From Ruditapes philippinarum (taxonomy: Eukaryota), in assembly GCF_026571515.1 (NCBI RefSeq), contig NW_026854037.1:1-64000 (forward strand): DNA of 64,000 bases, read 5' to 3'. The position numbers and the translations under genes were made by a program. The notes under the pieces are model-generated. The model saw only the letters and a list, made by a program, of their open reading frames with translations, had not been told where the DNA came from and ran no database searches. Shown in pieces: positions 15,699 through 57,886 of this stretch (within the stretch, counting starts at the first letter, position 1; the number at the start of each line of letters is the position of its first letter).

Positions 15699-16310
15699 AT
15701 GTCTGAAGAGAGAACGTATTACATTAGAACTAGTGTTATGTACACAGACCTGACAAGAGAGTTGTTATGTAAAGTGTTCAAATATTTGATAAAAAGTGAT
15801 GACATCACAGACTTTCTCTCATCTCCAGAGCAGCAAAATATATTAAGGGATCTATTTCAAAAAAATGTCATAAACAGGTATGACTATGATCTGGTTCATG
15901 GTCAAGGTTTAAATCTAGAGAGATTCGATATTTCACTTTTGCTAAGACTTATACTAAATTTGTGTAAAGATAATATATCAAAACCACAGCGCGGTTGGCA
16001 AAATAAACCACACCCGAAAGACGAAAGTCTTGGTGCTGATCTTCTTCGATTGATAGATGTCAGAAACAAGATAATAGGTCATCGAGCGGATGCTAAATTG
16101 TCGAAGGCAGAATTTGAAAAGACTTGGGCAAAAATCAGAGGTATTTTGTTGAGAGTGGTTGAACTTGTTGACTCGACGGCTAGTGAAAACTGTGAACGAA
16201 GAATAAATGAATACAGACGACTAAATGTAGATACAGAGAATGCTGCAGTTAAGAGGTTACTGGATGAGTTGCTTAAATACAAAAAAGAATTTGATTACCT
16301 TCAAGAAAAG
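15699..16310 (+). CDS. Coding exon 1: DZIP3/hRUL138-like HEPN domain
   Basis: MSEERTYY...FDISLLLRLILNLC..PQRGW..PHPKDESLGADLLRL..RNKIIGH..LSKAEFEKTW fits the DZIP3-type HEPN pattern, with Rx5H at 16062-16082. Donor AAG|GTCAAT, phase 0. Confidence 0.88.
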
Positions 16311-16775
16311 GTCAATGCTTTTAAATTACGTTTTATTTCAGCAGTTACATATGTCTATCTCAAATATTCCAGTATTAAACATATAAATTCATTACAGTCG
16401 AATTTATTTTAATCCAAAATTAGCACTTATCAATTTTTATATATTTTTATGTAAGTCTAACATTGGGAGATAAACTTGTAGTCATATTTTCATACCCGTT
16501 ACTATACTTCTGATAGGCCTGCTAGCAACTGTTACACAAGTTAAGCACAATATCTTCAATCCGATAATCGTAGTTATGTGCTTAAGTACCTTCTATTTCA
16601 GGTTGAAGAATTGAGTAGAACATCAAAGGGTTAGTAGTATTTATAATTGTATTGTTGTGTTCATCTTATTACTATTTTCTTGCTGTTGTATAAAATAATA
16701 TTGACATGTACCATTTCTGTATTCATGTACTTAAAACTTTAAAGGTCTTTCATTTTTTCAATATCACAGGCTAAT

Positions 16776-16867
<92 letters not shown>

Positions 16868-19800
16868 TGAAATGATTAAGATTGATTGACATGTTATTGT
16901 AGAGTTTCAGGTTTTTTTCCAAAAAAACCCCGAGAGATTTGTACGTTTCATAAAACTTTTGTTCAACGGAGGGCGTATCGTGTTATGTGGAATACTGGAG
17001 AAGAAGTTGGGTGACCAAGACCTATCAAAATTTCTTGAAAAAAAGAAGGGAACGCTGACAAGAAATATTGGAGAGAAATTTTCCAGTTACCTATACCCAC
17101 ACGAGTCTTGTTCAGATTATAAAAACTGGGATATTTTTCTTCTGGCATCAGTTTTGCTGCTCACGTTTGATGATGACCTAAGTCAAAAGGAGATCATGTG
17201 TATCGGGCTAATAAAAAGTGCAAGGGTAAATTATGCTTCACTTGCCTTGCAGTCTCTAGATGCAGATGCCTTTCTGATCAGTTGGACTGACCTTATCATT
17301 TGCCTAAAACATCTTTCATTCAACATTGCTGAAGACGACAGACAACAAGTTGAACATCTTATTGAACTTTATAAGAAAAAAGGCGAAGCAGGATGTGACG
17401 TTGAGGAGTATTTTAAACAGCTAAGAGAATCTGGTGTTGAAGTGAAAACTTTAAACGATGTCTACAACGGTACATTTATTTATTTCTAAGAACGCATGTA
17501 TTGCTAGGTAACTAAGTATTTAAAAATAACAGCGAACACATTTATCTGCAATGTTTCTTAAACATTTATTTTATTAATGTGTGATAAATTTACAACGTTT
17601 TGTGAAAGTATATAATTACAATCCTTCTTTTTCCATAGAAACAATAACGGAATTGAGCGATATGCTGAACCAGTTGAGCCAAAAAGCTATCAAGTTTCAA
17701 CAAGAATATGGTAAGTATATAATCGATTAAGTGAAATAAGACATTAGATAAAAATTTAACAATGTCTGCAATTTTTATACATAATACGATTCCAATAATA
17801 GTGTTTTACAACACACATGTACATACATGTATATCATCGCAGTTCAGTTTTTCTTCTGTTTCCTTTCAGTTTTAAAATTTAAACTGCTGACAACATGTGA
17901 AAATGAAGAAATTAAGAAAAGAGCGGAGGACATACTCGAGATCAACACGCAAATACAAAAATCAGACCAACCGTCAGGTTCTCAAAGGAAAGAAATAGAC
18001 AAAGTACTAGCTTTCATTGCCACACATCCTGATGTACAACTTGTTGAAGCCTCCATACAAAATTTAGATCAACCGTCGAGGATTTCAACGATGAAATATA
18101 AATGTAAGTACAAATATATAAAACCATATTACACACATCGATTTATAGTCTGTTAAAGGAACTCATCAGAGGCCCATGATGCTTAAACATAATATTTGAA
18201 AAGCTTACATAGACCAATTGGTGCACTTTAAACAGGAAGATATGCAAAAGATAAACAGAAAAGACTCAGGAATTAATTGAAAATCGTATTTTGTGCTATT
18301 CTTACCCCGATTTGAGTGAAAAGCGTTGGAAGTCTTTTTTCAGTTTTGGGTCATTTTTTCACAATCAGAATAATTATTCTGAAAAAACGGAGTGAGTGAA
18401 TGATTTGCAATTTTGCACATAAAACATTAATGTAGACCTACATCTAGCCTGTGATTCGGGCGTTGATAGTTTTTGCTTATTTATAACATTTTCTTTGCTT
18501 ATAAGTTATTCATAACAGATGCGCTATTCCGTATTCGTTCGTGGTTTTGACAGTGTCGATTTGCAAAACCGAAGTACATAAAAAATCGACAGACTGGAAC
18601 CCAGGCTACTATAAGCGCAAAGTGTGCAAGAAGCCACCGCAACCTAATCTAAGTGGCCTTAGGCGTGTTGCGTTCGTTTTAAGTTGTGCTGAAATTTTGT
18701 TTAAAATTGCGAATTAAATGTTATTTTCTCCTACATTTATTTGTAGAATACGATACAAACAAAGATTGCCAATTAGGAATTTGCTGAAGTGTTTTGTAAT
18801 GTTATTATTATTTAGCTTTGATTTATATTTAATTGCAAGACGATCACGTGCTTTTAAACGTCTTTTTAAATGGCTATAACTACATGTATTCGTAACTACA
18901 TGTATATGTAACACATATGTGTCACAAAAGCTTCGCTCAAGCTTCGCTTTTACTTTTTGTGAGAAAGCTATCCAGCTACTTTACGGCCGTGAAACATCGG
19001 AGGTTCTACTCAGGTGCCCATTCGTAACTTTAATAACGCATTGCAGAGTACTTGACGTCTTCCTCCATCAGTTAAACAGAAAAGTCGCAGTATGACCTTT
19101 ACTGTGTCGGTTTGACGTAGAACCCAATTAAAAAAATCAGACAAATGCTTCACTTTCTCGCTTTTCCTGCTAGTTAACATTGTGAGTAACATGCCATTAA
19201 TTTAGATTATATATTGTTCTCGAAAAGAATTTACTTTGATTCGTAAGTCAAATGTAGGTGATCTTTATACAGACTTTGTCGTAAGATTATTCCATTAGTG
19301 TTGTCTACAACCTTTAATCATTATAAAAGCTTTTCCAATTGTATTATCGATGGAAATCCTAGAATAAGATTTCATCCGCAATTGCAAGCTTTAAGTTTTT
19401 AACAGAACAAAAAACCTCTTTATCTGTAATTTCGAAACTTATTAATAAGTGGTTACTGTTTAAATATAGCTCACCTTAATGGTAAGTGTTATTCTAAGAC
19501 ACACTGAAGTGGTAACATTTATAATACAGCATATTTTTGTGGTTATTGTTTTCATACAACATACTTTAGTTGTCACTGTTTTCATACAACACACTTAAGT
19601 GGTTATCGTTTTCATACAGCATACTTCAGTGGTTACTATTTTCATACAGCCCTATTTAGTTGTTACTGTTTTCCTACAGCAAACTTTAGTGGTTACTGTT
19701 TTTATACAGGACACTTTAGAGGTTACTGTTTTCATGCTACACACTTCAGTGATAACTCTTTTCTTACAGCACACTTGAGTGGTTATTGTTTCCATACAGC

Positions 19801-22800
19801 ACACTTTATTGGCCAATGTTTTATACAACATACTTTTCTGGTTACTGTTTCAATACAACACACTTGAGTGGCTACTATTTTCATACAGCGTACCTTATGG
19901 TTACTGTTATATGAAAACAATAAGGACAAGTTGTTACTTTTTCATGCTTCACGCTTGAGTGATTACTCTTTTCGTACAGCACAATTGAGTGATTACTGTT
20001 TTCATACAACAGACTTTATTAGTTAAAGTTTTCATACAAAACACTTAAGTTGTTACTGTTTTCATACAACACACTTAAGTGGTTATTTTTTTCATATAGC
20101 ACATTTTTTCATACAGCACACTTTAATTGTTACTTTTTTTAATACAACACGTTTGAGTGGTTACTGTTTTCATACTGCACACTTGTGTGGTTACTGTTTC
20201 CACACAGCACACTTTAGTGGTTACTGTTTTTAATACAACACACTTCGCTGGTTGCTGTTTTCATACTGCACACTGTAGTGGTTATTGTCTTCATGCAGCA
20301 CACTTAAGTAGTTACTATTTTCATACATCACACTCGAGTGTTTACTGTTTTCATACAACACTTTAGTGGTTACTGTTTTCATACAACACACTTTAGTTGT
20401 AAACAGTACTGATTTCATACAGCGCACTTAAGTGGTTATTGTTTTCAAACAACACACTTGAGTGGTTATTGTTTTCATACAGCACATTTTAGTGGTTATT
20501 GATTTCGTACAGCACATTTCAGTGGTTACAGTTTTCTCACACCACGTTAATGGTTACTGTTTTCAAACTGCACACTGTAGTGGCTTTTGTCTTCATACAA
20601 CACACTTTAGTGGTTACTCATTGTCAGGAGAAATGACTGCCTTGATGTTATTAAATCTAAGGAAAGATTCAGTAATAAATATTGGAACCAATTTCCAAGA
20701 TATGGGGGCTGGCCAGCACCGCCTGACATAAAATTGAAATATTCTCAGTGGGAAAACTAGCATGTAATTGTTTAGTTAATACTATTTTTTAGGTATTTTT
20801 ATCTTTTCTATCTCAAATCAATATAAACATTTAAACAACAAACTCTGATCATTATTTACACCCAAAACAAACACACATCATTAATCAGCCACTTATACGA
20901 AATATCTTTTCACGTATACGTCTTTTATACAGTAACACAAATATGAATATTTTTACAACTGTAAGATACAGTATAAACCACAAACATTCATCCAACAATA
21001 TTAACTTCACACAATATAATCAGCATCAGAAAACAACTTAAACTAAAGCACCCAATATTTACATATATCCTCAAAACAAAGCCTCAACTAATATAATCTT
21101 GACCAGACAAACATTTAACCAATATCAACCAATTATATCTTCACAAACAGATATAACTCAACAACCAAAACAACTAATTACAACCAATAAACCCTGATCA
21201 CCACAATTATATTCAACCACTTCAACAAACCAACAAAACTCCCTTCAAAACAACAAAATTCTCTTCACAATAAAAAAATAACCGCTACACACTATCAGCG
21301 TGTCTCTCCACACCTATTCAAGTTATTTAGATAAGCTAAATAAATTGGCCTTTCAACATTTTTTCAGGCACAATTTTTACTGAAATGTCTCATTAAGATA
21401 GCCCAGAATTTATACCTTTGTCTTTGCAAGACTATCATGTTTCTGTAAAATATGTGAAAAAAAGCGGGAAAATGATGCATTTAGCTAAAACACAATGGAG
21501 TAAATGAAATGCGTTCATTCTTTTTTAAAATTGAAAAAATGTGACAAAAATTTATTTGATGCAAATTCTTTATTCGATGAAAGTTATTCACTAAATGAAC
21601 AAGATCATTTTTAAATCCATTTTGACTCTACTTGAAAAAGAGCTCTTTTTCATTTTTTTTACAATGTATTTATTTATTTTTTTTTTGCCCTTCTGTGTAT
21701 CAGCGTATTGATTTGTTCCTTTGACCAAGACATTGTAATCATTTACTGAAATTCAAAGGGCATGTACACTGAATCAACAACAAAAAGTCAGAAAATAATA
21801 AAAATAACAGCACTATCAAACCTTCGGGCACATGTTTTGTGTCAAACTGGTGTTATCAGTGTCTTGGCAGCCAAAAACTTGTAGAAAAATAGAACGTGTT
21901 CTAACTTTCTTGCAAGGAATTATCTTCTTGGATGTCACATAATTTCTTTTTAAAACTCATTCAAGTAGGGTGTCTACACTATTCAATACAAGAGAATATG
22001 ATACTTGCATTCAAGACTTGGATAGGTGTAGACGGGCCCTAACTGAAGTAAAATCTCTCTCAAAACGTGCATATTTGCTAGCTTAAACGATATGACCTTT
22101 ACACATGTATACATACAGCGAACCCTGATATTTACACTCTATTTAAAACAATGTATCACTGTAAAGAAATATTAACTCGTTGTTTCATCTACAGCAATAT
22201 TTATCACTGTAGGGAAATATTAACTCGTTGTAAGATACAGATCTACATATAAACTTCATGATTATTCTGACACCCATTTCATACAGTACACTTGCGGGGT
22301 TAAAGTTTTCATACAACACACTAAAGTGGTGACTGTTTTCATACAGCACACTTTAGTGATTATTATTTTCATACAGCATATTTTAGTGGTTATTGTTTTC
22401 ATACAGCACACTTCAGTGGTTACTGTTTTCTCACACCACGTTAATGGTTACTGTTTTCAAACAGCACACTAAAGCTGTGACTGTTTTACTACAGCACACT
22501 TTTTTGGATACTTTTTTTATACGACACATTTTTGTGGTTAATACTTTCTATACAACACACATTAGTGATTATTTTTTGCTACACACTTGAGTGATAACTC
22601 TGCAGCACATTTTTCATTCAGCACACTTTAGTGGTTACTGTTATCATACAACACACCACATTGGTTACTGTTTTGATACTGCACACTGTAGAGGTTATGT
22701 TCTCCATGCAGCACACTTACGTGGTTACTGTTTTCATACAGCATACTTCAGTGGTTATAGTTTTCATGCAGCAATCTTAAATATTCACTGTGGTCTTAAA

Positions 22801-24948
22801 ACACTTTTAAGTGGTTACTATTTTCATACATCATACTTTTATGGTTACCGTTTTCATACAACACACGTGAGTGGTTACTGTTTTTATACAACACTCTTTA
22901 GTGGTGACTGTTTTCCTGCAGCACACTTAAGTGGTTACTGTTTTCATAGGGGACACTTTAGTTGTCACTCTTTTCATACAACACACTTAAGTGGTTACTT
23001 TTTTCATACATTACACTTGAGGGGTTACTCTTTTAATACAGCACACTTTAGTGGTTACTGTTCTCATACAAGAAACTTGAGTGGAAAGTGTTTCCATACA
23101 GCATACTTTAGTAGTTACTGATTTCATACAACACACTTTAGTTGTAACTGTTTTCATACAACCCTCTTAATAGGTAAATGTTTTCAAACAACACACTAAA
23201 TAGGTTACATTTTTCATACAGTACACTTGAGTTGTAATTGTTTTCATACAATACACTTTAGTGGTAACTGTTTTCATACAACACATTTAAATGCTTATTA
23301 TTTCATACAACACACTTAAGAGTTAACTGTCTTCACACTGCACACTTTATTGGTTACTGTTTCCATACAGCATACTTAAGTGGTTACTGTTTTCATACAA
23401 AACACTTGAGTTGTTACTGTTTTCATACAACACACTTAAGTGGTTATTGTTTACATAAAGCACATTTTTTAAGTTAGTATTTTCTTACAGCACATTTTAG
23501 TTGTTCCTTTTTTAATACAGAACACTTTAGTGGTTATTGTTATCATACAACACACTTAAGTGTTTACTGTTTTCATCCAACACAATTAAATAGTACTTGT
23601 TTTCATACAACACACTTTCGTGGTTATTGTTTTCGTACAACACACTTAAGTGGTTACATTATTCATACAACAAACTTGAGTGGTAACTATTTTCATATAG
23701 AACACTTCAGTAGTTACTGTTTTCAGACAGCACACTTTAATGGCTACTGTTTTCTCACACTACAGTTTAGTAGTTATTGTTTTCATACAGCACACTTAAG
23801 TTGTTACAGTTGTTATACAGCACACTTGAGTGATTATGTTTTCATACAGCACACTAAATAATTATGTAACTGTATTCATACAGTATTCTTCAGGGTTTTT
23901 TCCATACTGTACACTTTAGTGGTAACTGTTTTCATACATCACACTTTAGAGTTAACTGTCATCATACTGCATACTTTAGTAGTTATTATTTTCATATAGC
24001 ACACTTTATTGGTTATTGTTTTCATACAACAGACATTAGTATACTTTGGACCGCATTTAAGGAGACACAGGCAAAATGTCTTACTTTTTAATTTTCATTC
24101 ATTTCTCCGTAAATGTCCTCAAAATGAATACATAAGACAGTCAAAAGGATCAAATTTTTCTCCATATAAAGAATAAAATGGTGATTTTCTAACTTGACCC
24201 GCGTGGATCAGGTGAGATCGATTAGAGTGAAGTCTGGAAACGTTAAAGAACATGTCAAATGAATGACATAGACTTGTTTCAATCATACAATATCCACACT
24301 ATCTGTTATTGTAACTAAAAGGGTTTGTTTAAGTCACATGACTTGTTTACAAACTATTTGGTGATTGTGTTTGCGTTTAAATTTCGTTCAACTAATATAG
24401 GTATATATTTACGATCCAAACTATATCGAATTTATACCAACATACATGCTGGGACTTAAAGGAATGTCATTTTAGCGTGGTTTGACTTAATAAGATCATT
24501 TTAATATTTTTGTCATTATTTGCCAGAATATCCCTTTATAATTAAGATTTGTTTGTGATTGAAGTATTTACACATTTTAATCAGAAAAATCTTTTTCACT
24601 GTAACTTTTTTATTTCTTAAGGTATTTACTTCAAAATTGAATTATTTGCTTCTGATCATCAACCACATCATATGTGACAAGGTTCACAAATAGGGCAACA
24701 GAATTGTTAGAACTTACCCCTCCCGCTTGAAATTAGAGCTGTCATGAAACAATTCTTTTATGACTTCTTTATTCTTAATTATCTACTTCAAACTTCGCAT
24801 AATTATATGTTTCGTATCATCACCCACAACATATATGTGGCAAGGTTCATAATTCAATCACCTATATTTCAGAATTATCTTCCTTTGTCTTAGAAATTTC
24901 AAGAAAAAAAGTTGTTTGCTTGTTATCATTTCTTTCTTTCTTTCTTTT

Positions 24949-25000
<52 letters not shown>

Positions 25001-28000
25001 TTTTGTCTTTCTCGGTTTAGAACTGTTCACGTTTTAGAGGAGAAGATGTGTAAGCGGCCGGATAGCTAAGTCGTAGAGCTGCAGTACGGTATTCCGATGG
25101 TCTCGGGTTCGAGTCCGGGTCAGGCTGCACATTTTCTTTGTTTGTGATTGAAGTTTTTACACTTTTTAATCAGTAAAATCTTTTTCACTGTAATTTATTT
25201 ATTTCTTAAAGTATTTACTTCCAAATTGAATTATATGTTTCTGATTATCAACCACATCATATGTGACAAGGTTCACAACTAGGGCATAAAAATTATCTGA
25301 ACTTACCCCTCCCGCTTGAAATTAGAGATGTCATAAAAAAAATTCGTAATAACTTCTTTATTTTTAATATATCTACTTTAAACTTCGCATATATGTTTCG
25401 TATCATCAACCACAACATATATGTGACAAGGTTAATAATTCAAATACCTATATTTACAGAATTATCTTCATATGTCTTAGAAATTTCAAGAAAAAAATGT
25501 TTGTTCGCTATAATTTCTTTCTTTCTTTCTTTTTTTCTTTCTTTCTTTCTTATTTTTCTTTCTCGGTTACTGTTCACTATTTAGCGGAGAAGATGTGTAA
25601 GCGGCCGGATAGCTCAGTCATAGAGCCGCGGTAGGGTATTCCGAGGGTCTCGGGTTCGAGTCCGGGTCAGGCTGCACATTTTTTTCACCCTGTGACATTT
25701 GGCGCCCAACGTGAGGCCGTGACTGAATACAGCTCAGAGTTTAATTCACATTGCTCTGTAACTCTGTGAAATTCGAGGACGAATTTTAATATAGCAGGGG
25801 AGTATGTCACGGTTCAGAACTGTTCACTATTTAGTGGAGAACATGTGTAAGCGGCCGGATAGCTCTGTCGGTAGAGCCACGGAACGGTATTCCGAGGGTC
25901 CCGGGTTCTACTTCAGGCTTCAAGTATTATCACTCAAATCGTGTGTGAGAAGATTCAATACGCTATGTTGACCATGTCCAAATCCCCCCCCCCCCGAACT
26001 TAGATTTTATTTCTAGAAGTTATTGTTTTTTTATTCAAACAATTTTTTAAAAGAATTAACTCTAAAATTTTAACTCACGCATCAATATAATATGACAAGG
26101 AATATAAATCTTGAGTCCATATTTTCAGAAGAATCACCCCTTAAACTTTGAATGAGTAGATTTATAAGTCTAGTGCCTGGGTTTCCATGATTATTTTTAT
26201 AATGAACTTTAATTTATAATAAATTTATTTGATAATATATATTAATATATAAGACAACTTTGTATGTGTATTGTGTGTTCTATAGATTATATAGTGAACT
26301 TATAAAGAAATTCTCCCAAAACACAGTTAGTTAAATATTATCCAAATTTTGTAGGATTGTTTCTTGGGTGGTTGGCTGAAGGGCTTCGAAAGCTTTCTAA
26401 AGAATTTGATTCATGCAGTAATCCTGTTACCATAGCAACCAAAATAAACAATTAGTAAGAATTAAAAAAATCTTCTTCTAAAGACCCACACATCCTTAAG
26501 CTTAGATTTTTGCCTAATGTATTTTCCATTGGACCTCTACCAAGATTGTTCGAATAAGGGCCCTGGGGTCAAAATTGGCTTTCAAAATCTACTTGTCTGA
26601 AGGAAGAAGGCTTAATGCTTTAATATTTGTTATATATTATCATTTATAGGTCGTCTACAAAGGTACAATGCATAGAGCTTTGATATATAATGTCATCTAT
26701 AGGTCCACTTCAAATTGTGTTCAAATTTACCCCTAGTGTCAAAATTGGCTTGCCCCGGAGGTAACAGGTTTTCCTTATACGTATATAATAAAAACTAAAA
26801 AACCTTTCTGAACTGACAAGGTTAGATGTAAGATAATTGGCATGAGATATAGTGTAGTGGTCCTATACCAAAACTAAAGCCCTGGGGTAAAAATATTCCC
26901 CGCCCGAGATGTCATTGATTTTTCATTTTGTGCATATGGTAAAAACATAATTATAGCCTTATTTGATTATTCATGTAAGAAAAACCTATACCCACGGGGC
27001 AAGGCCAATTATGACGCAAGGGGCAAAATTAAGAAACTTTAACGGGACCAAAGATGATAGTACATGTATATACCACATACTTTTTACTTTCTGACAAGAT
27101 GAATTTTAAAATTTTTTACTATTTGTACATAATGAAATCAATTACCCCCGTGGCGGAGCCAATTTTGAATGTTTAGATTTACAAAGGTGAGAGGTTTGAT
27201 ATCTAGTACGAAACATTGTTAAGTGGAGCTACACTAAGATTGTTCAAATTATAGCACTGGGGTCAAAATTGGCACGCCCCTGGGGTTATTGATTTTTAGT
27301 ATGTACATATAGTAAAACATTGTCTAAAGGTACAATGCATGGAGCTTTAATATATACTATCATCTATAGGTCCACTATAAAGTTTGCCCCTTATGTCAAA
27401 TTGACCCAACTCCGCGGTCATATGTTTTCCTTATATGTATATAGTAAAAACCTAATAAACCTCTTCTCTGAATTGACAAACGGTAGAGGTTAGAGACTTG
27501 GCATGAAACATTGTGTAGTAGAACTCTACCAAGATTGTTCAAATTATACCCCTAAGGCCTGAAATTGATTTCGTCCCGAGGGTCATTGATAACCATTATG
27601 TACATATAATAAATCATTAAAACATCTTCAGCTGGCCCGAAGAACGAAGCTTAACCCATTTTTTTGGTACACAATATCGTCCATAGGTCCTCTATAAATG
27701 TTTTTCAAATTATTTCATAGTGTCAAAATTGGCATTGCCCAGGGGGGGGGGGGTCATAGGTGTTCCTTATATGTATAAAATAAAAGCTTAAAAATCTTCT
27801 TTTCTGAATTGAAAAAGGCTAGAGGTAAGATATGTGACATGAAACATTGTGTAGTGCAATATACCAAGATTATAGCCCTGGGGTAAAGATTGGCCCACCC
27901 TGGATGGTCATTGATTTTCATTAAGTTAAGATTTTAGTGCCATTTTGAGCTATGTTTTACATTTAATTTTGGTATACTACGTTGTAATGAAACTTGTATG

Positions 28001-31000
28001 TAAAAGTAAGATAATGGTGCAAATAGAGCAAGATATTGTATTATCCATTTCATTGGGTTCGGTAATGATCCTAAATTTTGCTTGCCAGTTGGTGTCTTAA
28101 CAACTAATGAAAGGAATGTGTTAAGGTTTCAAACACATATTTGAGAGCAAATATGAGGTGTCTGTCTAAGGTTTATAGCTCTAAACCGTATTTTGACAGG
28201 ATTATAGCCTTTTAGGAACTTAGACATTTCTTGGCTAAAATTGTGCATGTAAATTTAAATCAATCTTTCAAACTTCTAAGATATTATCTTGAAACTTAAT
28301 ACATATCTTCGGGATCATAACTTGAGATCGCTATCATTAGTATCAATTATGTGAAATATAGCCATTTTGATTTGTTGGTTAAATTTTACACTTAACATCA
28401 ATCTTCAAAAGTATGTAAATGTATTGACATCAACATTTTATTTGTCTTTGGGATCAAAACTGAAAGTCACTTATGAAGGCTTATAATTTTGATACGGATT
28501 TTACTGAATTATGGCTCTTTATGGCTCTTTTGTCGATTTTTGCATATGACATTATTTTTCTAAACTAATAATGCTCTTTATTTTCTTTTCTTAATCCGTG
28601 TCTGCGGGATAATGATTCAATTTCACAGGTCACTTGCATGCAGTATTTTTTGTTGTTGATCTGTACGTTAGTTATTTCACGGCGTCTCAACGCCGTGATA
28701 TTGTGATGGGTAGTTTTCGGTAGCATGGGCATAAGTCATGTGACAAAATGCCTTTCGATTTCTACAGCCGACATTTTATTGATTTTTTACGCAATCATTG
28801 TACAGCCCATTTCCGTGAAAAGTTACATAGAAACAGTTTTTTTTTCAAAACCATATAGAATCTAATCAGTATTTTATCAACACATGAAATATCAGTGTTT
28901 TATATTAACACATTTTCGCACATCCTTATGACACACTTCAGAAATTCGCCAGTTAGCATTGTCACCGTACGGAACGTGTTACAGTATCGCGTTTTCCGGT
29001 TACAGTATAAAATTTTTAAGATGAGAAAAGAAGTAGGGTCGTAAAGTTGTTTTTGTGCTTTGCTTGTAAGGAACAGAATCCGGTATCTAGCCAAATATTT
29101 CTTCAGACCCTGCACCCCAGATTTATCGCTAAATTGTCTCATAAATGTGCAGATTTGACAGTTTAAAAATTTGAATCGGGAGACCTACGCATTTTTCTCC
29201 CATTCCGACATTATTTAAGCATGCCTAGATAAAGTACATTGTGTAAATCTACAAAACATTAGTCCTTTGTGTTTAGAAACGTTTATATAAAAGTAAATGA
29301 CCAGTTGAAGAAAAAAAAAACCAGTGTTACAGTATAGCGCGAGGTTAATTTTGAAGGGTTACAGCATAGACCTAGCGACTTTGATCCAATTTTGTTACAG
29401 TTTATACCCAGATTTCGGTTACAGTTTAGGATACTTGCCAAATTTCAAACAAAGTTCGTGCATCGCTTATTGTTATGAAATTACTCATACCTTTCTATTT
29501 AATACATTCTTGAAAGGTTGTATTACTTTTTTTCTTCAGCAGAAAAGTTATACTAGTAGTTTGCTATTGTTTTACTTTAAGTTTCAGATTGAGACTTTTT
29601 GATGAATAAGTAATGTCCTAAGTAAGGACTGTTTTCACGACAACAACAGTAACTTTTATCGAATTGTATCGAGAGATGAAAGATTATTGCTTGATTTCAT
29701 TACACATTATAATAATGCCTATTAGGCTACTAGTAATAAAATAGAGAAAAAAGAATCTTTAACAGAAGTCCAACACGGAAAACATGAAAATGTTGCAGGC
29801 TCAGTTTGATTAAACCTGTTCATAGACGATAGTGGTAACTGCAAGCTACTGTCCACGCCTCCTAGCATCGGCTTCGGCAGAATTCACATTAAAACATGAA
29901 CTGGTACACTTTAGATTTTTAACATCTGTGGATGTGTTCATATGGCGGTTATCATGGAACTTTCAATGTGACACGTTATTTCCATTCTATGACAAGCGGC
30001 ATATTATCCCCAGGTTAAAATTTGCGTGTGCCCTAAACGAGAATACAATGAGTGAAACTAAATAAAATGAAATTTTGACAGGGGATCGGAGGTTATGAAG
30101 CCTGCATACCATAGTTAAGCTGTCAAAAGACAGAATTAACAAGCAGGCAATGCCCTAAGAATGATTAAACAGTATTTAAGTGAGCAATATAACAATCTTA
30201 AATTTTATTTTAATTTGGAATTTCCATCTACCATAATGTATTTTGTAAATATTTAAAAGGGTTTGTTACTTTTTGGCTTTCTTGGATTTTAAGTTTCAAC
30301 GACACTGAGATCATGTGAAAACATTCCTACTTAAGTGTAAAGAAAAACCCCAGATACCTTTTGTGAAACATTTCAAACACGAGCGGGCACCTAACTAGAA
30401 CCACCGACCTTCCGTAAATTAGCTTGATAGATTCCTCACATACAAATAATCCAAAGTCATGATTTGATTTCAACTTCAGCAGTAAATGAAAGATAATTTG
30501 AAGTCGACGGCCTTATCCCGACTCTGCCACTTTTATGAACGCCCATCAGGTTCACTAGAGAAGATAATGTAATAGTCTGACCTTAATTTATACTCTTTCA
30601 ATATTATTTTCTTTTTCAGAAACATGAAAACTGCTATACAGGATGTCTGAAATAAAAAAAAACGACTTTTAATTCAATTATGACAAATAATCGTAACTTC
30701 AACAAAGACGCATTCGAAATGACCCAATGATCATGATTTGATTTGAATGCTTTTGGTTCGAGATGAGAAGGGTCTTTAAACATTGCCTTTTTTCAAAATC
30801 TATGTTTTGGGCTTTCGTATCCCCGATTGCAACCGAAACCATTTGGACAACTTAATTGGTAGACAGTCAGGTAAATTTCATCACATTTAATCAAGAAGTT
30901 ACTAAGCGGATGGGATTGCACACACGTATTAAGGCATGACAATAAGTATTTATATGTGTACGTCAGACGGACGAATATAGCCATCGGGCCAATAATCTCA

Positions 31001-52000: not shown

Positions 52001-54264
52001 TAGAAGTGCGGTGCATTATAAACGTAACTTTGCCTTCCCAACTTTTGGAGTTACTGTCCTTTGTTCATTTTAACACTATGAACTTTGTCTGGGACATAAC
52101 TATAAAAGGTATCAACTTAAAACTGTAGGTAAATCGATCTCATTAAGTAGAAGAGCACTGAATAAAAACGAACTGTAAGCCTCTCATCCTAAGTTTTGAA
52201 GTTATTGCCTTTTGTTATTTTTTACACTTTGAACTTTGTCCGGGACCTAACATGTGAACTATAAAGAATATCAACTTGTAACGTTGAAGGTAGATACATC
52301 TGAATGATAAAAGGTGCAGTGCCCTCCCTTTCCCTAATTTTTGAGTTCTTGCCCTTCGTTCGTTTATCACTTAGTCCAAATCCAAACTTTGATTTATCTT
52401 ATTGGTGCAATAATTTAAAAACATTTGACATTTAAGAAAAACTCTATAAACTACTGCATCATCCTTGTGTGAAAAAATATTAACTAACTAAATAACTATT
52501 CTGACAAGCACGTGTAGTGGGTATTCGGCACTTCGTTACAATTTCAGTTTTTATAGATGTTTATCTGATTTGAAACTACAATATCAAGAACTGTTTGACT
52601 TGCAACATTTAGATTCTGCTTGTGGACCTTAACTGATGTAAATTTTTAATCATGCCCACTGCGTCAGTATTTGGCTTGCGCTAGGGGACTCTTAATTTAT
52701 ATAGACAAACATTTAAATATTCCTGTGTGAACTCATATTGCTACTTGGGTCAATATTTGGCTCGCCGCCGGAGTCACTTAATTTAGAATTCTGATATAAA
52801 AAATAAACATGTAAGTGTGAAACAATTTCCAGAAGAATCAATTTGTAGATTTAAACAAAATACTTTTATCAGGACTCTCAAGTAAAAATTGTCTCTGTCC
52901 CTGGAGTTACTTGATTTTAGGTTTTTTCCGATGTCAAGGTGGCCTTTGCCACTTTTTGTGCTCCTAGACATATTCCGGCAAACAATCGTCGCTTCATCCA
53001 TTTTTCCGTAGATCTATTACCTATTTTATATTTTGAACATAAGTACCTTCGATACCAATTATTGTCCACTTTGTCATCGGCTGGATTAATGTCAGTGCCA
53101 TCGATGCATCAAAACAACAATATTGCAATTAAGTCACTACATTCGTCATTAAAATACATTGACAAACAGGCCGGTGCTGGTAGAGCCCATTTATTGTTAG
53201 TGGTATTCTTTTGAAAGATATATGTTGGGTCACTTTTAGTTTAATGCTAGAAAAGTGCAGATTATATCATAAAAAATCATCATTTATGTGCACTGTTTGT
53301 CATTGTAATCGTATTTTTTACCATTAACCTTATCTTTTTGTGTAGATGTTGATGGAGGAAGTACTACAGAATGAAGAAAAGGGTGCTGTAAATGTGTCTA
53401 TATGGGATTTTGCTGGACAGGATATGTTTTATTCAACCCATCAGGTTTTTCTTTGCAAACGCGCTGTCTATTTGCTTATAACCGATATATCTAAATATAT
53501 AAAAGAAAACGTAAAAGACCATTGGAGTGAAGAAGAAAGCACAGAGCGCCAGGTTTCAGGTTAGTTAATGTTTTTTAAACAAAGTTAACATCAAATTAAA
53601 AGTACGAATTAATTACAACTTTCTTTAGAAAAGAAACCAATGCATTAAGACAGGTTCAAGGGTCGAGACTTGCAAAAAACTTGATACTTGTAAAAGTAAC
53701 ACTTAGGTCAATATCTTTGCACAATTATAACCAGACAACTAAAGTTCAATCTTTTGTATGTGTTCAACAAATTCAAACAATCTTTTATTAAAATTATGCC
53801 TTTAATTTTTTATGATTAGTGGTGAGCATTTGTGATCATAAACTGTTTCTCGTCAGTCTTTCATTATTATTCGAAAATTATTAGTTTCATTTATTCTTTA
53901 TTTAACAGAAATGAGCCTTTGTTTAACTTCTGAAATATTATATAAACCAATAAAAGGTTAACAAGAGCTACAAATAGACACTACAAATGAAATATTTATC
54001 AATACTCTTCTTAGTTACTACATTGGCCATACTGAAATATTTGTCATGTAATTTAATGTTACTTGGTCTCTACTTAAGATTTATGATTTTCGCTCCTTGG
54101 ATATATTTTTTCCCGCCATTAATCGATCAGAGTATAGTAAACATACTTACATTTTAGAATACATTGACTTTTGGCTGAATTCAATCCACCATTATTGCGG
54201 TTACTCTGAGAAAAATGGACCTCCTGTTGTTTTGGTTTGTACCTTTGCAGACAAGTTACCAAAG
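15699..54264 (+). CDS. Spliced gene, 3'-partial: tandem DZIP3-like HEPN domains fused to a Roc (ROCO/LRRK-type) GTPase, at least 856 aa
   Basis: Exons 15699-16310, 16602-16629, 16903-17469, 17639-17710, 17870-18103, 34701-34961, 37857-37916, 40346-40411, 42384-42455, 43778-43837, 46961-47026, 48995-49066, 49779-49855, 53346-53559, 54158-54264. All introns are GT-AG, phases are compatible, and the 2568 nt stay open. The link across 18103-34701 is inferred from phase only. Confidence 0.72.
16602..16629 (+). CDS. Coding micro-exon 2 (VEELSRTSK)
   Basis: TTTCAG acceptor and G|GTTAGT donor. Its 28 nt bridge phase 0 to phase 1, as exon 3 requires. Confidence 0.75.
16784..16864. repeat. (CT)n microsatellite
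   Basis: Pure CT run of about 80 bp in an intron. Confidence 0.98.
16903..17469 (+). CDS. Coding exon 3: second, degenerate HEPN-like domain
   Basis: DLSKFL..YLYP..WDIFLLASVLL..IKSARVNYAS..LDADAF..SWTDL parallels exon 1. TAG acceptor and G|GTACAT donor, phase 1-1. Confidence 0.8.
17639..17710 (+). CDS. Coding exon 4 (ETITELSDMLNQLSQKAIKFQQEY)
   Basis: Pyrimidine tract plus TAG acceptor and G|GTAAGT donor; 72 nt, phase 1-1, open. Confidence 0.82.
17870..18103 (+). CDS. Coding exon 5 (helical linker VLKFKLLTTCENEE...HPDVQLVEAS...)
   Basis: Strong TTTCCTTTCAG acceptor, in frame with ORF 17827-18156. The T|GTAAGT donor gives phase 1. The 3' boundary is less certain. Confidence 0.7.
18960..19137 (+). 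mobile_element. SINE-like body fragment of a second family (related pieces at ~30340-30530 on - and ~46598-46715 on +)
   Basis: Shared motif GAGAAAGCTATCCAGCTA...TCGG(A/T)GGTTC...TTCCTCCA.CAGT and an A-rich end. No tRNA-like head seen. Confidence 0.55.
19445..24040. repeat. 30-bp minisatellite array in two blocks (19445-20620 and 22278-24040)
   Basis: Diverged tandem units close to GTGGTTACTGTTTTCATACAGCACACTTTA. Confidence 0.95.
20622..22272. mobile_element. 1.65 kb insertion splitting the minisatellite (TGT...ACA ends)
   Basis: Begins TGTCAGGAGAA and ends TTATTCTGACA, a short inverted terminus. Flanks CTCAT and CCCAT form a possible 5-bp TSD with one mismatch. Contains a C/A-rich low-complexity tract at ~20850-21290. 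Confidence 0.55.
24060..24535 (+). mobile_element. TTAA-associated MITE (Kolobok-like), copy 1
   Basis: Clearly homologous to 35932-36430. Imperfect TIR AGGAGACACAGGCAAAAT / ATTTGCCAGAATATCCCT, with TTAA at the left flank. Confidence 0.65.
24549..25684 (+). repeat. Tandem duplication with ~590 bp period, including (TTTC)n and a TRIM LTR
   Basis: TTGTTTGTGATTGAAGT.TTTACAC starts at 24549 and again at 25138. The copies stay colinear through GGTCAGGCTGCACATTTT. Confidence 0.9.
25561..25908 (+). mobile_element. TRIM (miniature LTR retrotransposon) with tRNA-like LTRs, Helenus-like
   Basis: LTR1 ends GTGACA at 25697. A tRNA-Lys-type PBS TGGCGCCCAACGTGAGG follows at 25700-25716, then a PPT AGCAGGGGAG at 25793-25802. 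LTR2 starts TGTCAC at 25805 and is 3'-truncated. The LTR holds an A box TAGCTCAGTC(G)G and a B box GGTTCGAGTCC. Confidence 0.85.
26330..27920 (+). repeat. Diverged tandem core repeats of a HINE-like family (relatives at ~33800-34560, ~38450-39230 and 57889-59100)
   Basis: Recurrent CTCTACCAAGATTGTTCAAATTAT..CCCTGGGGTCAAAATTGGC..GCCC motifs at roughly 150-180 bp spacing. Confidence 0.7.
28963..31586. mobile_element. Non-autonomous DNA transposon with ~470-520 bp TIRs, CAC...GTG ends and a 5-bp TSD
   Basis: 28963-29430 is a diverged reverse complement of 31065-31586. Ends are CACCGTACGGAACGTGTTACAGTA and TACTGTAACACGTTCCCTACAGTG. ATTGT flanks both sides (28958-28962 and 31587-31591). Confidence 0.85.
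32060..33430 (+). mobile_element. HINE-like element with ~150-bp tandem core repeats
   Basis: GGGGATATAG followed by a (GTCC)n-like microsatellite, then repeated GAGATATCAAC(T/A)TGAAACTTCATAGGTGGATAGATCT...GAGTTATTGCC units. Confidence 0.7.
34701..34961 (+). CDS. Coding exon 6: Roc GTPase N-terminal part (G1 and G2)
   Basis: LPEEIRQMD..FTKALQEGKVPVRNIRVMVVGHYEVGKSTL..PTEGIDV. P-loop GxxxxGKS at 34811-34834 and Roc switch-I TxGID. CTACAG acceptor and G|GTAAAT donor. Confidence 0.93.
35100..36620 (+). repeat. Diverged ~150-bp tandem repeat interrupted by a MITE
   Basis: Recurrent GGT(C/T)ATCTGGGGTCAAAAACTAGGTCAC..CTTGTTAACACT-like units. Confidence 0.6.
35932..36430 (+). mobile_element. TTAA-associated MITE (Kolobok-like), copy 2
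   Basis: TTAA|AGAGAGACACAGGCAAAAT...ATTTTGCCTAAATATCCCT|TTGA; homologous to 24060-24535. Confidence 0.65.
37857..37916 (+). CDS. Roc-insert micro-exon A1 (GKERFNVLGQLANILEENTT)
   Basis: TTTAG acceptor and ACAG|GTAAAT donor; 60 nt, phase 1-1, open. Confidence 0.72.
39245..40040 (+). mobile_element. HINE-like element with tandem cores (duplicated at ~45510-46440)
   Basis: GGGGATAG plus a (GTCC/GTCT)n microsatellite, then repeated TTTCGTGTCCGCTCCATAAC..CTTGGCACAAATGATCACCAT..GTCAAGGTCA units. Confidence 0.65.
40346..40411 (+). CDS. Roc-insert micro-exon B1 (DDNIAQMMQTEVTESIYTRNPT)
   Basis: CAG acceptor with a weak pyrimidine tract and ACAG|GTATGT donor; 66 nt, phase 1-1, open. Confidence 0.62.
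42384..42455 (+). CDS. Roc-insert micro-exon C1 (VDPSHVSVQQKKNEDTEINSSVRT)
   Basis: TACAG acceptor with a weak tract and ACAG|GTAAGA donor; 72 nt, phase 1-1, open. Confidence 0.62.
43778..43837 (+). CDS. Roc-insert micro-exon A2 (GKERFNVVGQLANILEENTT)
   Basis: Duplicate of A1 with intact splice sites. Confidence 0.68.
44513..44860. mobile_element. 348-bp TTAA-specific MITE (Kolobok-like), present only in duplication copy 2
   Basis: TTAA TSD at 44509-44512 and 44861-44864. TIR AGTGTCATTATGCTCAT / ATGGGCATAATGTCACT. Copy 1 has the empty site ATTATCCTTAAGAAGTCC at ~38581-38598. Confidence 0.92.
46961..47026 (+). CDS. Roc-insert micro-exon B2 (DDDVAQMMQTEVTESIYTRNPT)
   Basis: Duplicate of B1 with intact splice sites. 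Confidence 0.62.
48995..49066 (+). CDS. Roc-insert micro-exon C2 (DDPSHVSVQQKKVEDTKINSSVRT)
   Basis: Duplicate of C1 with intact splice sites. Confidence 0.62.
49779..49855 (+). CDS. Roc-insert exon D (EMTNQDFTKKEGETTKAKEKRNDKLK)
   Basis: TTTTTTAAG acceptor and AAG|GTTAAA donor. Its 77 nt convert phase 1 to phase 0, which the exon at 53346 requires. Confidence 0.68.
50050..51125. repeat. Highly diverged tandem repeat region
   Basis: Recurrent GACCTTGAC..GGTC and TTGCTATAATTGAC.GTAACTT motifs. Confidence 0.5.
51525..52550 (+). mobile_element. HINE-like element with a duplicated 5' end; related to 32060-33430
   Basis: TATACCCCC..GGGGTATACTGTAG hairpin present twice (~51530 and ~51610), a GGTC microsatellite and AACTTTGTAGGTAGATAGATCT..GAGTTATTGCCCTTTG cores. 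Confidence 0.65.
53346..53559 (+). CDS. Roc GTPase exon with G3
   Basis: VSIWDFAGQDMFYSTHQVFLCKRAVYLLITDIS is the Roc WDFAGQxxFYxTHxxFL signature. TGTAG acceptor and G|GTTAGT donor. Confidence 0.95.
54158..54264 (+). CDS. Roc GTPase exon with G4
   Basis: EYIDFWLNSIHHYC..PPVVLVCTFADKL matches the Roc pattern (F/Y)WL.SI...PVILVGTHxD. TTTTAG acceptor and AAG|GTATGT donor. Confidence 0.92.
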
Positions 54265-57547: not shown

Positions 57548-57886
57548 AGTGATACATTGAGTATGAAAAAAGTGCTTATATGGGTTCATCTTGTCCATAT
57601 CTTTTCTTTTTATAGACATAAGTTAGGCAAAGGCATGGACTCTGTTTCAATATTTTGGTCAAAACATTGTTGATGTGGTATACCTAAAAACTTTTGCTAT
57701 TACCAACATATCGCAAACATTAATTTTATATCAAGTGATTATATAAAACATGAGGATGACTCTCTTTAGCCCTGTATGTCATGCTTGGAAACACATTTTA
57801 ATGTACACAAAATCATATTTTTCAACATATGTACAAATGGCATGAAGATAAAAGCCACATTATATCATGAACAATACTCTGGGCAA

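What the first reader, a model, noticed from the sequence alone, without database searches (positions are those of the whole stretch)
15699..54264. Candidate HEPN-nuclease / Roc-GTPase fusion: a possible nucleotide-gated RNase immune effector
Seen: five exons encode a DZIP3-like HEPN domain with an intact RNKIIGH (Rx5H) motif and a second HEPN-like repeat. They have no stop and end in phase 1. The Roc G1/G2 exon begins at a phase-1 acceptor, and G3 and G4 exons follow in frame. Known: HEPN Rx4-6H RNases (the RNase L and Ire1 KEN domains, Csm6, Cas13) need two HEPN halves to form an active site. ROCO proteins switch monomer/dimer state with guanine nucleotide, and their N-terminus is usually LRR, ankyrin or similar repeats. 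Inference: this protein may couple Roc-COR dimerisation to RNase activation, a logic similar to RNase L and prokaryotic anti-phage HEPN-NTPase fusions. I do not know of a characterised protein with this architecture, though automated mollusc annotations may contain it.
Basis: partly seen in the sequence, partly recalled or inferred. Interest (0 to 1): 0.88.

Follow-up and report, generated by a model that had tools for sequence, protein, structure and literature searches.

The report
Clam HEPN RNase–Roc-COR GTPase fusion gene
This is a real, expressed clam gene, already in RefSeq as an uncharacterised protein, that joins a predicted RNA-cutting (HEPN) module to a LRRK2-type Roc-COR GTPase switch; nobody has tested what this combination does.

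Summary
Fifteen exons at 15699-54264, all with AG/GT borders, translate exon by exon to residues 1-856 of the database protein P0165. P0165 is NCBI [quoted passage not shown], 1273 aa, with Pfam HEPN_DZIP3, Roc and COR-A. The COR exons lie on the same contig beyond the window, from about 69.8 kb.

The critical junction is shown in RNA. Spliced contigs from three runs of three studies join 16903-17469, 17639-17710 and 17870-18103. They then continue past 18103 with 30 letters identical to window 34701-34730.

The N-terminus is a tandem HEPN. D1 has an invariant RNxxxxH motif (R122, H128). Its model has pLDDT 95.7, and its best solved match is the Csm6 HEPN domain (Z 9.1). D2 has the HEPN fold but lacks the histidine. 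Roc keeps G1-G4 and carries a 66-aa three-micro-exon insert, doubled here by a roughly 6-kb tandem duplication.

HEPN_DZIP3 with Roc-COR recurs in scallops, an oyster and freshwater mussels. In the mussels the order is reversed. This gene's Roc-COR nests among clam Roc-COR-Death/CARD proteins, so the fusion is recurrent and, in this lineage, young.

GTP-gated RNase activity remains an inference. The papers I found do not describe this architecture. An earlier follow-up in this scan (s1-793104) judged another HEPN/ROCO locus in this genome more likely two neighbouring genes.

The parts
15699..16310 (+). Exon 1, with the start codon (residues 1-204). Encodes HEPN domain D1 with RNKIIGH at residues 122-128.
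   Evidence: Pfam HEPN_DZIP3 E 1.2e-21. The motif is conserved. AF2 model pLDDT 95.7, and its best PDB match is the Csm6 HEPN domain, Z 9.1. The exon equals P0165 residues 1-204.
16602..16629 (+). Exon 2, a 28-nt micro-exon (residues 205-213, plus 1 nt).
   Evidence: Its letters appear as the loose end before 16902 in contigs of X1, X2 and X15. Matches P0165.
16903..17469 (+). Exon 3 (residues 214-402). Encodes HEPN-like domain D2, in which the His of the motif is absent (ARVNYAS).
   Evidence: Covered by RNA contigs. jackhmmer from exon 3 recovers both D1 and D2 positions in the family. Motif alignment. In the homolog model, D2's best match is the Swt1 HEPN domain, Z 8.6.
17639..17710 (+). 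Exon 4 (72 nt), part of the linker.
   Evidence: GT..AG joints 17469|17639 and 17710|17870 are seen in contigs of three runs. Matches P0165.
17870..18103 (+). Exon 5 (234 nt), part of the linker. It ends in phase 1. Homology to other HEPN-module paralogs stops about 16 codons before its end.
18104..34700 (+). Intron 5 (16.6 kb). It holds an expressed interspersed repeat (18234-18653), 30-bp satellite arrays (19448-20618 and 22277-24040) and other repeats.
   Evidence: Removed in RNA: contigs ending at 18103 continue with the letters of 34701-34730. Repeats.
34701..34961 (+). Exon 6 (residues 505-591). Start of the Roc module (LPEEI...), with G1 GHYEVGKS (542-549) and G2/switch I (PTEGIDV).
   Evidence: Roc/P-loop Pfam hits. 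Homology in all ROCO relatives begins at LP.EI, just behind this acceptor.
37857..42455 (+). Cassette A: three micro-exons, 37857-37916 (60 nt), 40346-40411 (66 nt) and 42384-42455 (72 nt). Together they are 198 nt (66 aa), phase 1 to 1, and form an insert between switch I and G3.
   Evidence: Exact match to P0165 residues 592-657, with AG/GT borders. The 60-nt exon is 95.7% identical to the paralog, against about 85% for the flanks. Not checked with reads.
43778..49066 (+). Cassette B, the tandem-duplicated copy: 43778-43837, 46961-47026 and 48995-49066.
   Evidence: Exact match to P0165 residues 658-723. The roughly 6-kb duplication maps twice onto a single unit of paralog C7142. Not checked with reads.
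49779..49855 (+). Exon 13 (77 nt). A K/E-rich end of the insert that shifts the phase from 1 to 0.
   Evidence: Matches P0165 residues 724-749. 92% identical to the paralog.
53346..53559 (+). Exon 14. Roc G3 (DFAGQ, residues 770-774) and switch II.
   Evidence: Pfam Roc E 2e-11. Matches P0165.
54158..54264 (+). Exon 15. Roc G4 (TFAD, residues 849-852). The last coding exon inside the window; it ends in phase 0 at residue 856.
   Evidence: Aligns with homologs. Matches P0165.
54265..64000 (+). First part of intron 15. The remaining exons (residues 857-1273, COR-A and COR-B) lie beyond the window on the same contig.
   Evidence: No COR-like ORF in the window. Matches at C2524:69839-70303 and 74532-74756. 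COR exons of the paralog lie at C7142:187-200 kb.

Best explanation
This is one expressed gene of the Manila clam (RefSeq LOC132738745). It encodes a 1273-aa protein with the order HEPN D1 (intact RNxxxxH), HEPN D2 (no His), a linker of about 100 aa, Roc GTPase with a 2 x 66-aa insert, then COR-A/COR-B.

Shown: the architecture, the splicing across the 16.6-kb intron, and the conserved catalytic motifs.

Inferred: the protein is a ROCO-type nucleotide switch whose output is the N-terminal HEPN RNase.
- In its closest relatives the same Roc-COR core carries Death, CARD, TIR, caspase or kinase domains.
- HEPN therefore takes the place of a cell-death or immune signalling module.
- The nucleotide state of Roc-COR would change dimerisation or conformation.
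- That change would either bring two D1 domains together or release D1 from D2, completing a composite Rx5H site.
- The active site would cut RNA, host or viral, giving translational shut-off or cell death.

The gene arose by exon shuffling. A widespread five-exon tandem-HEPN module was placed upstream of the conserved phase-1 acceptor that opens the Roc module. This copy has no C-terminal Death domain.
For: One gene:
- Contigs of X1, X2 and X15 (three studies) skip GT..AG introns. They run from 18103 into ATGAGCTGCCCGAAGAGATTCGGCAAATGG, which is window 34701-34730.
- Read depth falls right after 18103.
- No retrocopy exists in the genome that could mimic this.
- All 15 exons translate to P0165 residues 1-856.

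Domains:
- P0165 Pfam: HEPN_DZIP3 1.9e-21, Roc 5.6e-16, COR-A 7.7e-10 (39.3 bits, above its cut-off).
- LRRK2 Roc-COR and archaeal/bacterial Roco proteins are the best solved sequence matches.
- G1 GHYEVGKS, G2 T, G3 DFAGQ and G4 TFAD are all present.

HEPN:
- R, N and H are conserved across more than 45 relatives.
- The D1 model (pLDDT 95.7) best matches the Csm6 HEPN domain: Z 9.1, rmsd 3.2, 117 residues. Swt1, Roquin, Cas13-like and sacsin HEPNs also rank high.

Effector slot:
- Roc-COR relatives carry Death, CARD, TIR, NACHT, kinase with caspase, or HEPN.
- P0165 aligns with the Mercenaria Roc-COR-Death protein up to 10 residues before its own end, and it lacks the Death domain.

Recurrent fusion:
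- HEPN sits N-terminal in Pecten, Mizuhopecten, Saccostrea and a 6.5-kb Logan contig taken as a transcript (P0019).
- HEPN sits C-terminal in the unionids.
- The Roc-COR tree needs at least 3 changes of the HEPN-N label.

Selection: pN/pS against the duplicated locus is 0.0-0.35 on the Roc exons and about 0.54 on the HEPN exons.
Against: - I know of no HEPN_DZIP3 domain shown to cut RNA. This rests on my own knowledge and on the papers read (PMC3710099, PMC9646362).
- D2 lacks the His, so a cis D1:D2 pair would have only half a canonical site.
- No sensor repeats are present, and the trigger is unknown.
- The RNA contigs cover exon 2 through the G1 exon plus 51 nt, not the whole mRNA.
- The run types are guesses ('RNA?'), although intron removal argues that they are RNA.
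- The one raw-read RNA run (X24, 4% sampled) put almost no reads on the exons.
- The HEPN exons evolve fairly freely (pN/pS about 0.54).
- Exon 5 of the sister locus is partly deleted.
Confidence: 0.5

Rival explanations
1. The gene and architecture are the same, but the HEPN module is not a nuclease. It would be a non-catalytic RNA- or nucleotide-binding sensor or adaptor. The Roc-COR switch would then signal by pairing, through COR, with Death- or CARD-bearing ROCO paralogs.
For: Several eukaryotic HEPN domains are described as binders rather than enzymes. Anantharaman et al. say this of sacsin in some lineages (PMC3710099), and the isolated sacsin HEPN domain is reported to bind RNA (PMC13669270, title only). 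D2 has lost the His. The protein has no other recognisable sensor. Many Death/CARD ROCO paralogs exist in the same genome and in relatives.
Against: In D1, the R, N and H of the catalytic motif are invariant or nearly so over a large, otherwise fast-evolving family (mean column identity 13-16%). That pattern is expected for a catalytic site.
Confidence: 0.25
2. This is a young chimeric gene without a selected function: an expressed by-product of rampant exon shuffling and duplication in bivalve immune-gene clusters, drifting towards decay.
For: The fusion appears lineage-specific. The nearest Roc-COR relatives carry Death or CARD, and the nearest HEPN relatives carry other C-termini. pN/pS is about 0.5 overall. 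Exon 5 is partly deleted in the sister locus. A tandem duplication sits inside the GTPase domain. Coverage is low in the raw-read run.
Against: All 15 exons are open with intact splice sites. Every catalytic motif is intact. The Roc exons are under purifying selection (pN/pS 0-0.35). The arrangement survived a segmental duplication. The same domain combination arose repeatedly in other bivalves.
Confidence: 0.17
3. These are two separate genes, a small HEPN gene and a Roc-COR gene, and the joined RNA is an occasional read-through chimera. An earlier follow-up in this scan (s1-793104) reached this conclusion for another HEPN/ROCO locus in this genome.
For: The exons are 16.6 kb apart. An in-frame ATG (MDDRS, 34727) exists inside the G1 exon, and some relatives start there. 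RefSeq models are computational.
Against: The 18103 donor is used in contigs of three runs, and depth collapses right behind it. Unspliced exon 5 would add only 17 codons before a stop, and no terminating contig was seen. The Roc module's conserved phase-1 acceptor receives an upstream coding exon in most relatives compared, though a few start at or near it. The HEPN paralogs' own continuation of exon 5 is missing here.
Confidence: 0.04

Closest known systems
Bivalve and cnidarian HEPN_DZIP3-NACHT (NLR-like) proteins (Anantharaman et al. 2013, PMC3710099; Takeuchi et al. 2022, PMC9646362)
   Same: An N-terminal DZIP3-type HEPN domain with Rx4-6H sits in front of a signalling NTPase. Both belong to large lineage-specific expansions in bivalves and have a presumed antiviral or anti-transposon RNase role.
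   Different: The NTPase here is a Roc-COR small-GTPase module, not a NACHT STAND ATPase. No LRR, WD40 or TPR sensor is present. [quoted passage not shown]
ROCO proteins (LRRK2, DAPK1, MFHAS1, C. tepidum and M. barkeri Roco)
   Same: A Roc GTPase is followed directly by COR. LRRK2 aligns over Roc G3 to COR-A. Nucleotide-dependent monomer/dimer cycling is known for the family (PMC5714945, PMC11052575; from their abstracts).
   Different: There are no LRR or ankyrin repeats and no kinase. The output domain is a tandem HEPN. There is a long insert (2 x 66 aa plus 26 aa) between switch I and G3.
Venerid Roc-COR-Death and Roc-COR-CARD proteins (Mercenaria LOC128553824, LOC128558994, LOC123526993; P0166-P0168)
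   Same: These are the closest relatives of the Roc-COR core: 45% identity over 767 columns, the same insert position, and the same module start LP.EI.
   Different: They carry a C-terminal Death domain or an internal CARD and only a short N-terminus. This gene lacks Death and carries a 504-aa tandem-HEPN N-terminus.
RNase L and Ire1 (kinase/pseudokinase plus KEN-type HEPN)
   Same: The logic is the same: a nucleotide- or ligand-driven dimerisation module controls a HEPN RNase with a composite site.
   Different: There is no kinase fold, no KEN-domain profile hit and no ankyrin/2-5A sensor. The resemblance is functional analogy only.
Prokaryotic NTPase-HEPN defence proteins (PrrC/RloC ABC-ATPase-HEPN, AAA+-HEPN of R-M systems; PMC3710099)
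   Same: An NTPase is fused to a HEPN RNase in a conflict setting.
   Different: The NTPase classes differ (ABC, AAA+). These are prokaryotic operon-based systems with no homology beyond the HEPN fold.

Membership tests
HEPN superfamily, DZIP3/hRUL138-like family (PF18738) | Profile match above Pfam's gathering score | tested here: met
   Exon 1 scores 77.4 bits against a cut-off of 27. P0165 scores 76.8 bits.
HEPN superfamily, DZIP3/hRUL138-like family (PF18738) | Rx4-6H motif, usually RN...H | tested here: met
   R122-N-K-I-I-G-H128 (Rx5H). R, N and H are invariant or nearly so in the alignments. D2 does not meet this feature because it has no His.
HEPN superfamily, DZIP3/hRUL138-like family (PF18738) | Helical-bundle HEPN fold | tested here: met
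   The window D1 model has pLDDT 95.7 and pTM 0.90. Its top solved match is the Csm6 HEPN domain (Z 9.1, rmsd 3.2, 117 aligned), and further HEPN entries rank among the top rows. Caveat: helical bundles give middling Z by chance, and Foldseek found nothing significant.
HEPN superfamily, DZIP3/hRUL138-like family (PF18738) | Metal-independent RNase activity | not testable with these tools
   Needs biochemistry.
ROCO proteins (Roc-COR) | Roc GTPase profile and G1-G4 motifs | tested here: met
   Roc scores 59.3 bits in P0165 and 44.6 bits for the G3 exon. GHYEVGKS at 542, T in PTEGIDV, DFAGQ at 770 and TFAD at 849.
ROCO proteins (Roc-COR) | COR domain directly C-terminal of Roc | tested here: met
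   COR-A scores 39.3 bits against a cut-off of 35.3 at P0165 residues 918-1044. It is encoded outside the window, at C2524:69.8-74.8 kb and beyond. The stretch after COR-A, taken as COR-B, was judged only by alignment with P0166 up to residue 1263.
ROCO proteins (Roc-COR) | GTP binding/hydrolysis and nucleotide-dependent dimerisation | not testable with these tools
   Needs biochemistry.
RNase L / Ire1 (KEN-domain HEPN RNases) | Kinase or pseudokinase domain fused to a KEN domain | tested here: not met
   P0165 has no kinase or KEN Pfam hit. The protein is not a member; the resemblance is analogy of logic only.
HEPN-NACHT NLR-like proteins | NACHT/STAND NTPase domain | tested here: not met
   No NACHT hit in P0165. 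Relatives such as P0055 do have one.

The most novel reading that the evidence does not exclude
Bivalves have repeatedly built a new kind of animal immune effector in which a LRRK2-type Roc-COR GTPase directly gates a HEPN ribonuclease. GTP-state-dependent dimerisation would complete the Rx5H site and trigger RNA cleavage and cell shut-down. This would be a eukaryotic counterpart of RNase L and of bacterial NTPase-HEPN abortive-infection proteins. The variable micro-exon insert in Roc would act as the regulatory or recognition loop.
Probability: 0.3. Interest if true: 0.75.

Novelty: new variant of a known kind. Interest (0 to 1): 0.55.

Why it matters
- If Roc-COR really gates a HEPN RNase, this would be, to my knowledge, the first ROCO protein with a nuclease output.
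- It would also be a simple natural system for asking how the Roc-COR switch, the core of LRRK2, controls a neighbouring effector domain.
- It would extend the NTPase-plus-HEPN defence logic known from bacteria and from RNase L to a third class of NTPase in animals.
- The locus shows how bivalve immune genes are built. A portable five-exon tandem-HEPN module is plugged into a conserved phase-1 acceptor of a ROCO core, and a frame-neutral micro-exon cassette is doubled by tandem duplication.
- As it stands, it is an annotated but uncharacterised gene, and the function is inferred.

Tried and rejected
- Complex prediction on two copies of D1 gave no verdict (score 0.20, mark 0.32). It is not evidence either way.
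- Foldseek against the PDB found nothing significant for either model. Only the VIA-align searches were informative.
- The AF2 model of homolog P0005 had pTM 0.46, so it does not settle whether D1 and D2 pack together.
- The search for homologous proteins with the G1-exon ORF returned only prokaryote-style ORF calls on genomic DNA, with no junction information.
- A COR search inside the window with a home-made Roc-COR HMM found nothing after 54264. COR lies beyond the window.
The COR exons of this locus are therefore known only as match coordinates.
- Rfam found no RNA family in the window.
- I considered that 34701 might be a cryptic acceptor inside an ancestral first exon. I rejected this because homology in all relatives starts at LP.EI, right behind it.
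- Micro-exons were first sought with a splice-site scan, which found only the 60-nt and 77-nt exons. The full set came from P0165.
- I did not build or send a joined spliced model to any search tool. Exons were searched by reference one at a time, and the database protein P0165 stood in for the full length.

Full report
**What is in the sequence.** The window is G000:C2524:1-64000 of a 1.4-Gb, AT-rich animal genome.
- ORFs at 15690-16412, 16959-17489 and 17827-18156 carry the proposed HEPN exons.
- ORFs at 34652-34972, 53346-53564 and 54097-54351 carry the proposed Roc exons.
- Pfam matches exon 1 to HEPN_DZIP3 (PF18738, E 1.2e-21) and the G3 exon to Roc (E 2e-11). The G1 exon gives P-loop GTPase hits, including Roc at E 6e-4.
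The donor at 18103 (AAAT|GTAAGT) ends in phase 1. The acceptor at 34701 (CTACAG|ATGAGC) opens in phase 1.

**Is it one gene?** Phase agreement alone would happen by chance one time in three, so I looked for RNA.
- Twenty public runs of the same organism, from 12 studies, hold part of 15699-18103.
- I laid four runs on 16890-19400. Contigs of X1, X2 and X15 come from three different studies.
  - They cover 16902-17468, 17638-17709 and 17869-18103 and skip both GT..AG introns.
  - Before 16902 they carry the letters of exon 2 and the end of exon 1.
  - Behind 18103 they continue with ATGAGCTGCCCGAAGAGATTCGGCAAATGG, which is exactly window 34701-34730.
- In X2 and X15 the same 1224-nt contig extends 312 nt past 18103. 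That is the whole 261-nt G1 exon plus 51 nt.
- Depth falls to almost nothing just behind 18103.
- The run types are only guessed to be RNA, but intron removal argues for RNA.
- The genome holds no retrocopy that could mimic the joint. Exon 5 and the G1 exon each have only this locus and one paralogous locus as close matches.
- The HEPN and Roc exons are therefore spliced together.

**The annotated protein.**
- A search seeded with the HEPN region of a Mercenaria homolog returned P0165. This is NCBI [quoted passage not shown], 1273 aa, with precomputed Pfam PF18738, PF08477 and PF16095.
- It is 100% identical to most window exons in tblastn.
- Checked exon by exon, 15 exons with AG/GT borders translate to P0165 residues 1-856 without a mismatch, split codons included.
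- I did not build or submit a joined spliced sequence. Exons were searched by reference, and P0165 served for the full length.
- The organism is thus the Manila clam.

**The rest of the gene.**
- No COR-like ORF follows 54264 inside the window.
- A collinear paralogous locus, C7142:141.8-181.2 kb, is 82-90% identical in nucleotides through exons and introns alike. It has COR exons 17.7 kb downstream of its G4 exon.
- The matching exons of this gene lie on the same contig beyond the window, at C2524:69839-70303 and 74532-74756.
- P0165 scores above Pfam's cut-off for COR-A (39.3 against 35.3 bits, residues 918-1044).
- Its best solved sequence relatives are an archaeal Roco, LRRK2 (aligned from G3 into COR-A) and the C. 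tepidum Roco.

**Anatomy of the protein.**

*HEPN D1.* D1 (exon 1) has RNKIIGH at residues 122-128.
- R, N and H are invariant or nearly invariant across 11 paralogs and dozens of homologs, in families whose mean column identity is only 13-16%.
- Its AF2 model is confident (pLDDT 95.7, pTM 0.90).
- Its best solved match is the HEPN domain of Csm6 (Z 9.1, rmsd 3.2, 117 residues).
- HEPN domains of Swt1, Roquin, other Csm6 proteins, a Cas nuclease, sacsin and HepS also appear among the top rows.
- Foldseek itself found nothing significant, and helical bundles give middling Z by chance, so this adds to the Pfam match rather than standing alone.

*HEPN D2.* D2 (exon 3) is a second HEPN_DZIP3-like domain.
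- Profiles iterated from exon 3 pick up both domain positions in about 30 relatives.
- In the model of the 468-aa homolog P0005, D2's best solved match is the Swt1 HEPN domain (Z 8.6).
- D2 keeps the Arg but has no His, both here and in most relatives.
- That model's pTM of 0.46 leaves the D1-D2 packing open.

*Linker.* Exons 4-5 give a linker of about 100 aa.

*Roc.* Roc has G1 GHYEVGKS (542), a switch-I Thr, G3 DFAGQ (770) and G4 TFAD (849).
- Between switch I and G3 lies an insert made of a three-micro-exon cassette (60 + 66 + 72 nt = 66 aa, phase 1 to 1) present twice, plus a 77-nt exon that restores phase 0.
- The doubling comes from a roughly 6-kb tandem duplication that the paralogous locus lacks.
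- An insert at this position is ancestral to the subfamily.
- These micro-exons rest on the RefSeq model and on conservation. I could not check them with reads.

**Where it came from.**
- The five-exon tandem-HEPN module is abundant. The genome has more than 50 exon-1 copies, the closest 86% identical.
- In the other close copies exon 5 runs on into different downstream sequence, and no Roc exon is nearby.
- In the related clam Mercenaria the same module is fused to STAT-linker or SH3-SH2 C-termini.
- The Roc-COR core is closest (45% identity over 767 columns) to Mercenaria Roc-COR-Death proteins. P0165 ends 10 residues after that alignment and has no Death domain.
- In all relatives, homology begins at the LP.EI motif, right behind the 34701 acceptor, whatever lies upstream: a few residues, NACHT, NHL or HEPN. 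This phase-1 acceptor therefore looks like a conserved docking point for N-terminal modules.
- In a quick maximum-likelihood tree of 23 Roc-COR modules, this gene nests with strong support among venerid Death/CARD ROCOs.
  - Scallop ROCOs and one ROCO from a Logan contig, taken as a transcript (HEPN N-terminal), fall elsewhere.
  - An oyster ROCO (HEPN N-terminal) falls elsewhere.
  - Unionid ROCOs (HEPN C-terminal, after COR) fall elsewhere.
  - The HEPN-N label needs at least three changes.
  - Long branches and the small sample make the count rough, but a single origin is unlikely.
- Against the duplicated locus, pN/pS is 0-0.35 for the Roc exons and about 0.54 for the HEPN exons.

**How it most likely works.**
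- Shown: one mRNA joins a tandem HEPN with an intact catalytic motif to a Roc-COR module with intact G motifs.
- Known from the families: HEPN RNases use a composite site formed by two HEPN domains (PMC3710099). Roco proteins cycle between monomer and dimer with nucleotide state (PMC5714945, PMC11052575; taken from their abstracts).
- Inferred: HEPN occupies the slot that Death, CARD, TIR, caspase or kinase domains hold in sister ROCOs, so it is the output of the switch.
  - Roc-COR state would either bring two D1 domains together or free D1 from the His-less D2, turning on RNA cleavage.
  - The trigger is unknown, because there are no sensor repeats.
  - The variable insert in Roc is a candidate regulatory loop.
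- I put about 0.5 on this reading as a whole. The architecture itself is near certain, and the gated-RNase step is perhaps 0.3-0.4.
- The rivals are a non-catalytic RNA-binding HEPN (0.25), a young chimera without a selected function (0.17) and two genes with read-through (0.04).

**What is known.**
- Anantharaman et al. [quoted passage not shown]
- Takeuchi et al. 2022 describe more than 50 HEPN-NACHT genes per haplotype in the pearl oyster and propose RNase action against viruses and transposons.
- Neither paper, nor the ROCO papers and mollusc immunome papers my searches returned, mentions HEPN with Roc-COR.
- The proteins do exist in RefSeq as "uncharacterized" entries, and one Mizuhopecten cluster member is named roco5.
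- The gene is therefore annotated, and the kind (an NTPase-coupled HEPN_DZIP3 immune-like protein) is known. The Roc-COR variant is undescribed and uncharacterised as far as I could find.
- An earlier follow-up in this scan (s1-793104) judged another HEPN/ROCO locus in this genome more likely two neighbouring genes. Here the splice evidence points the other way.

**Verdict.** I rate it a new variant of a known kind, with interest 0.55.

Noticed in passing
window 36987-49100: A roughly 6-kb tandem duplication (unit A about 36997-42902, unit B about 42979-49600) doubles a three-micro-exon, 198-nt frame-neutral cassette inside the Roc domain. The paralogous locus C7142:158.7-165 kb has a single unit. 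This is the subject of the separate note s1-794034.
   Followed up: partly
window 18234-18653: An interspersed repeat just behind exon 5. RNA-contig depth reaches about 650, with many variant letters and loose ends in all four runs, so it is probably an expressed transposable element family.
   Followed up: no
window 19448-20618 and 22277-24040: Arrays of a 30-bp satellite in intron 5. The same satellite forms an array of about 7 kb at the paralogous locus (C7142:146-153 kb).
   Followed up: no
window 10519-12374 (+): A decayed LTR-retroelement pol remnant. The ORF at 11784-12371 has Integrase_H2C2 (E 3.5e-15) and a weak rve match. The ORF pieces at 10519-11274 look RT-like by eye but have no Pfam hit. 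The coding region is broken into several frames.
   Followed up: partly
window 4001-6000: A GC-rich block (GC 0.49 against about 0.33 elsewhere). Its ORFs at 4225-6102 have no Pfam match.
   Followed up: partly
proteins P0002, P0020, P0160 (Mercenaria mercenaria): The same tandem-HEPN N-terminal module is fused to a STAT_linker domain or to SH3 plus SH2 domains. This is an unusual HEPN-SH2/STAT-like architecture that I did not pursue.
   Followed up: no
proteins P0170, P0171, P0177 (unionid mussels): These ROCO proteins carry the HEPN_DZIP3 domain at the C-terminus, after COR. Two of them also have NHL repeats at the N-terminus. This is the reverse order to the clam gene.
   Followed up: partly
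G000:C7142:141782-200130: A segmental duplicate of the whole locus (HEPN exons, Roc exons and COR exons, 82-90% nucleotide identity, introns included). Its exon 5 is partly deleted. Whether it still makes a fusion protein is unknown.
   Followed up: partly
window 16783-16864: A perfect (CT)41 microsatellite in intron 2.
   Followed up: no
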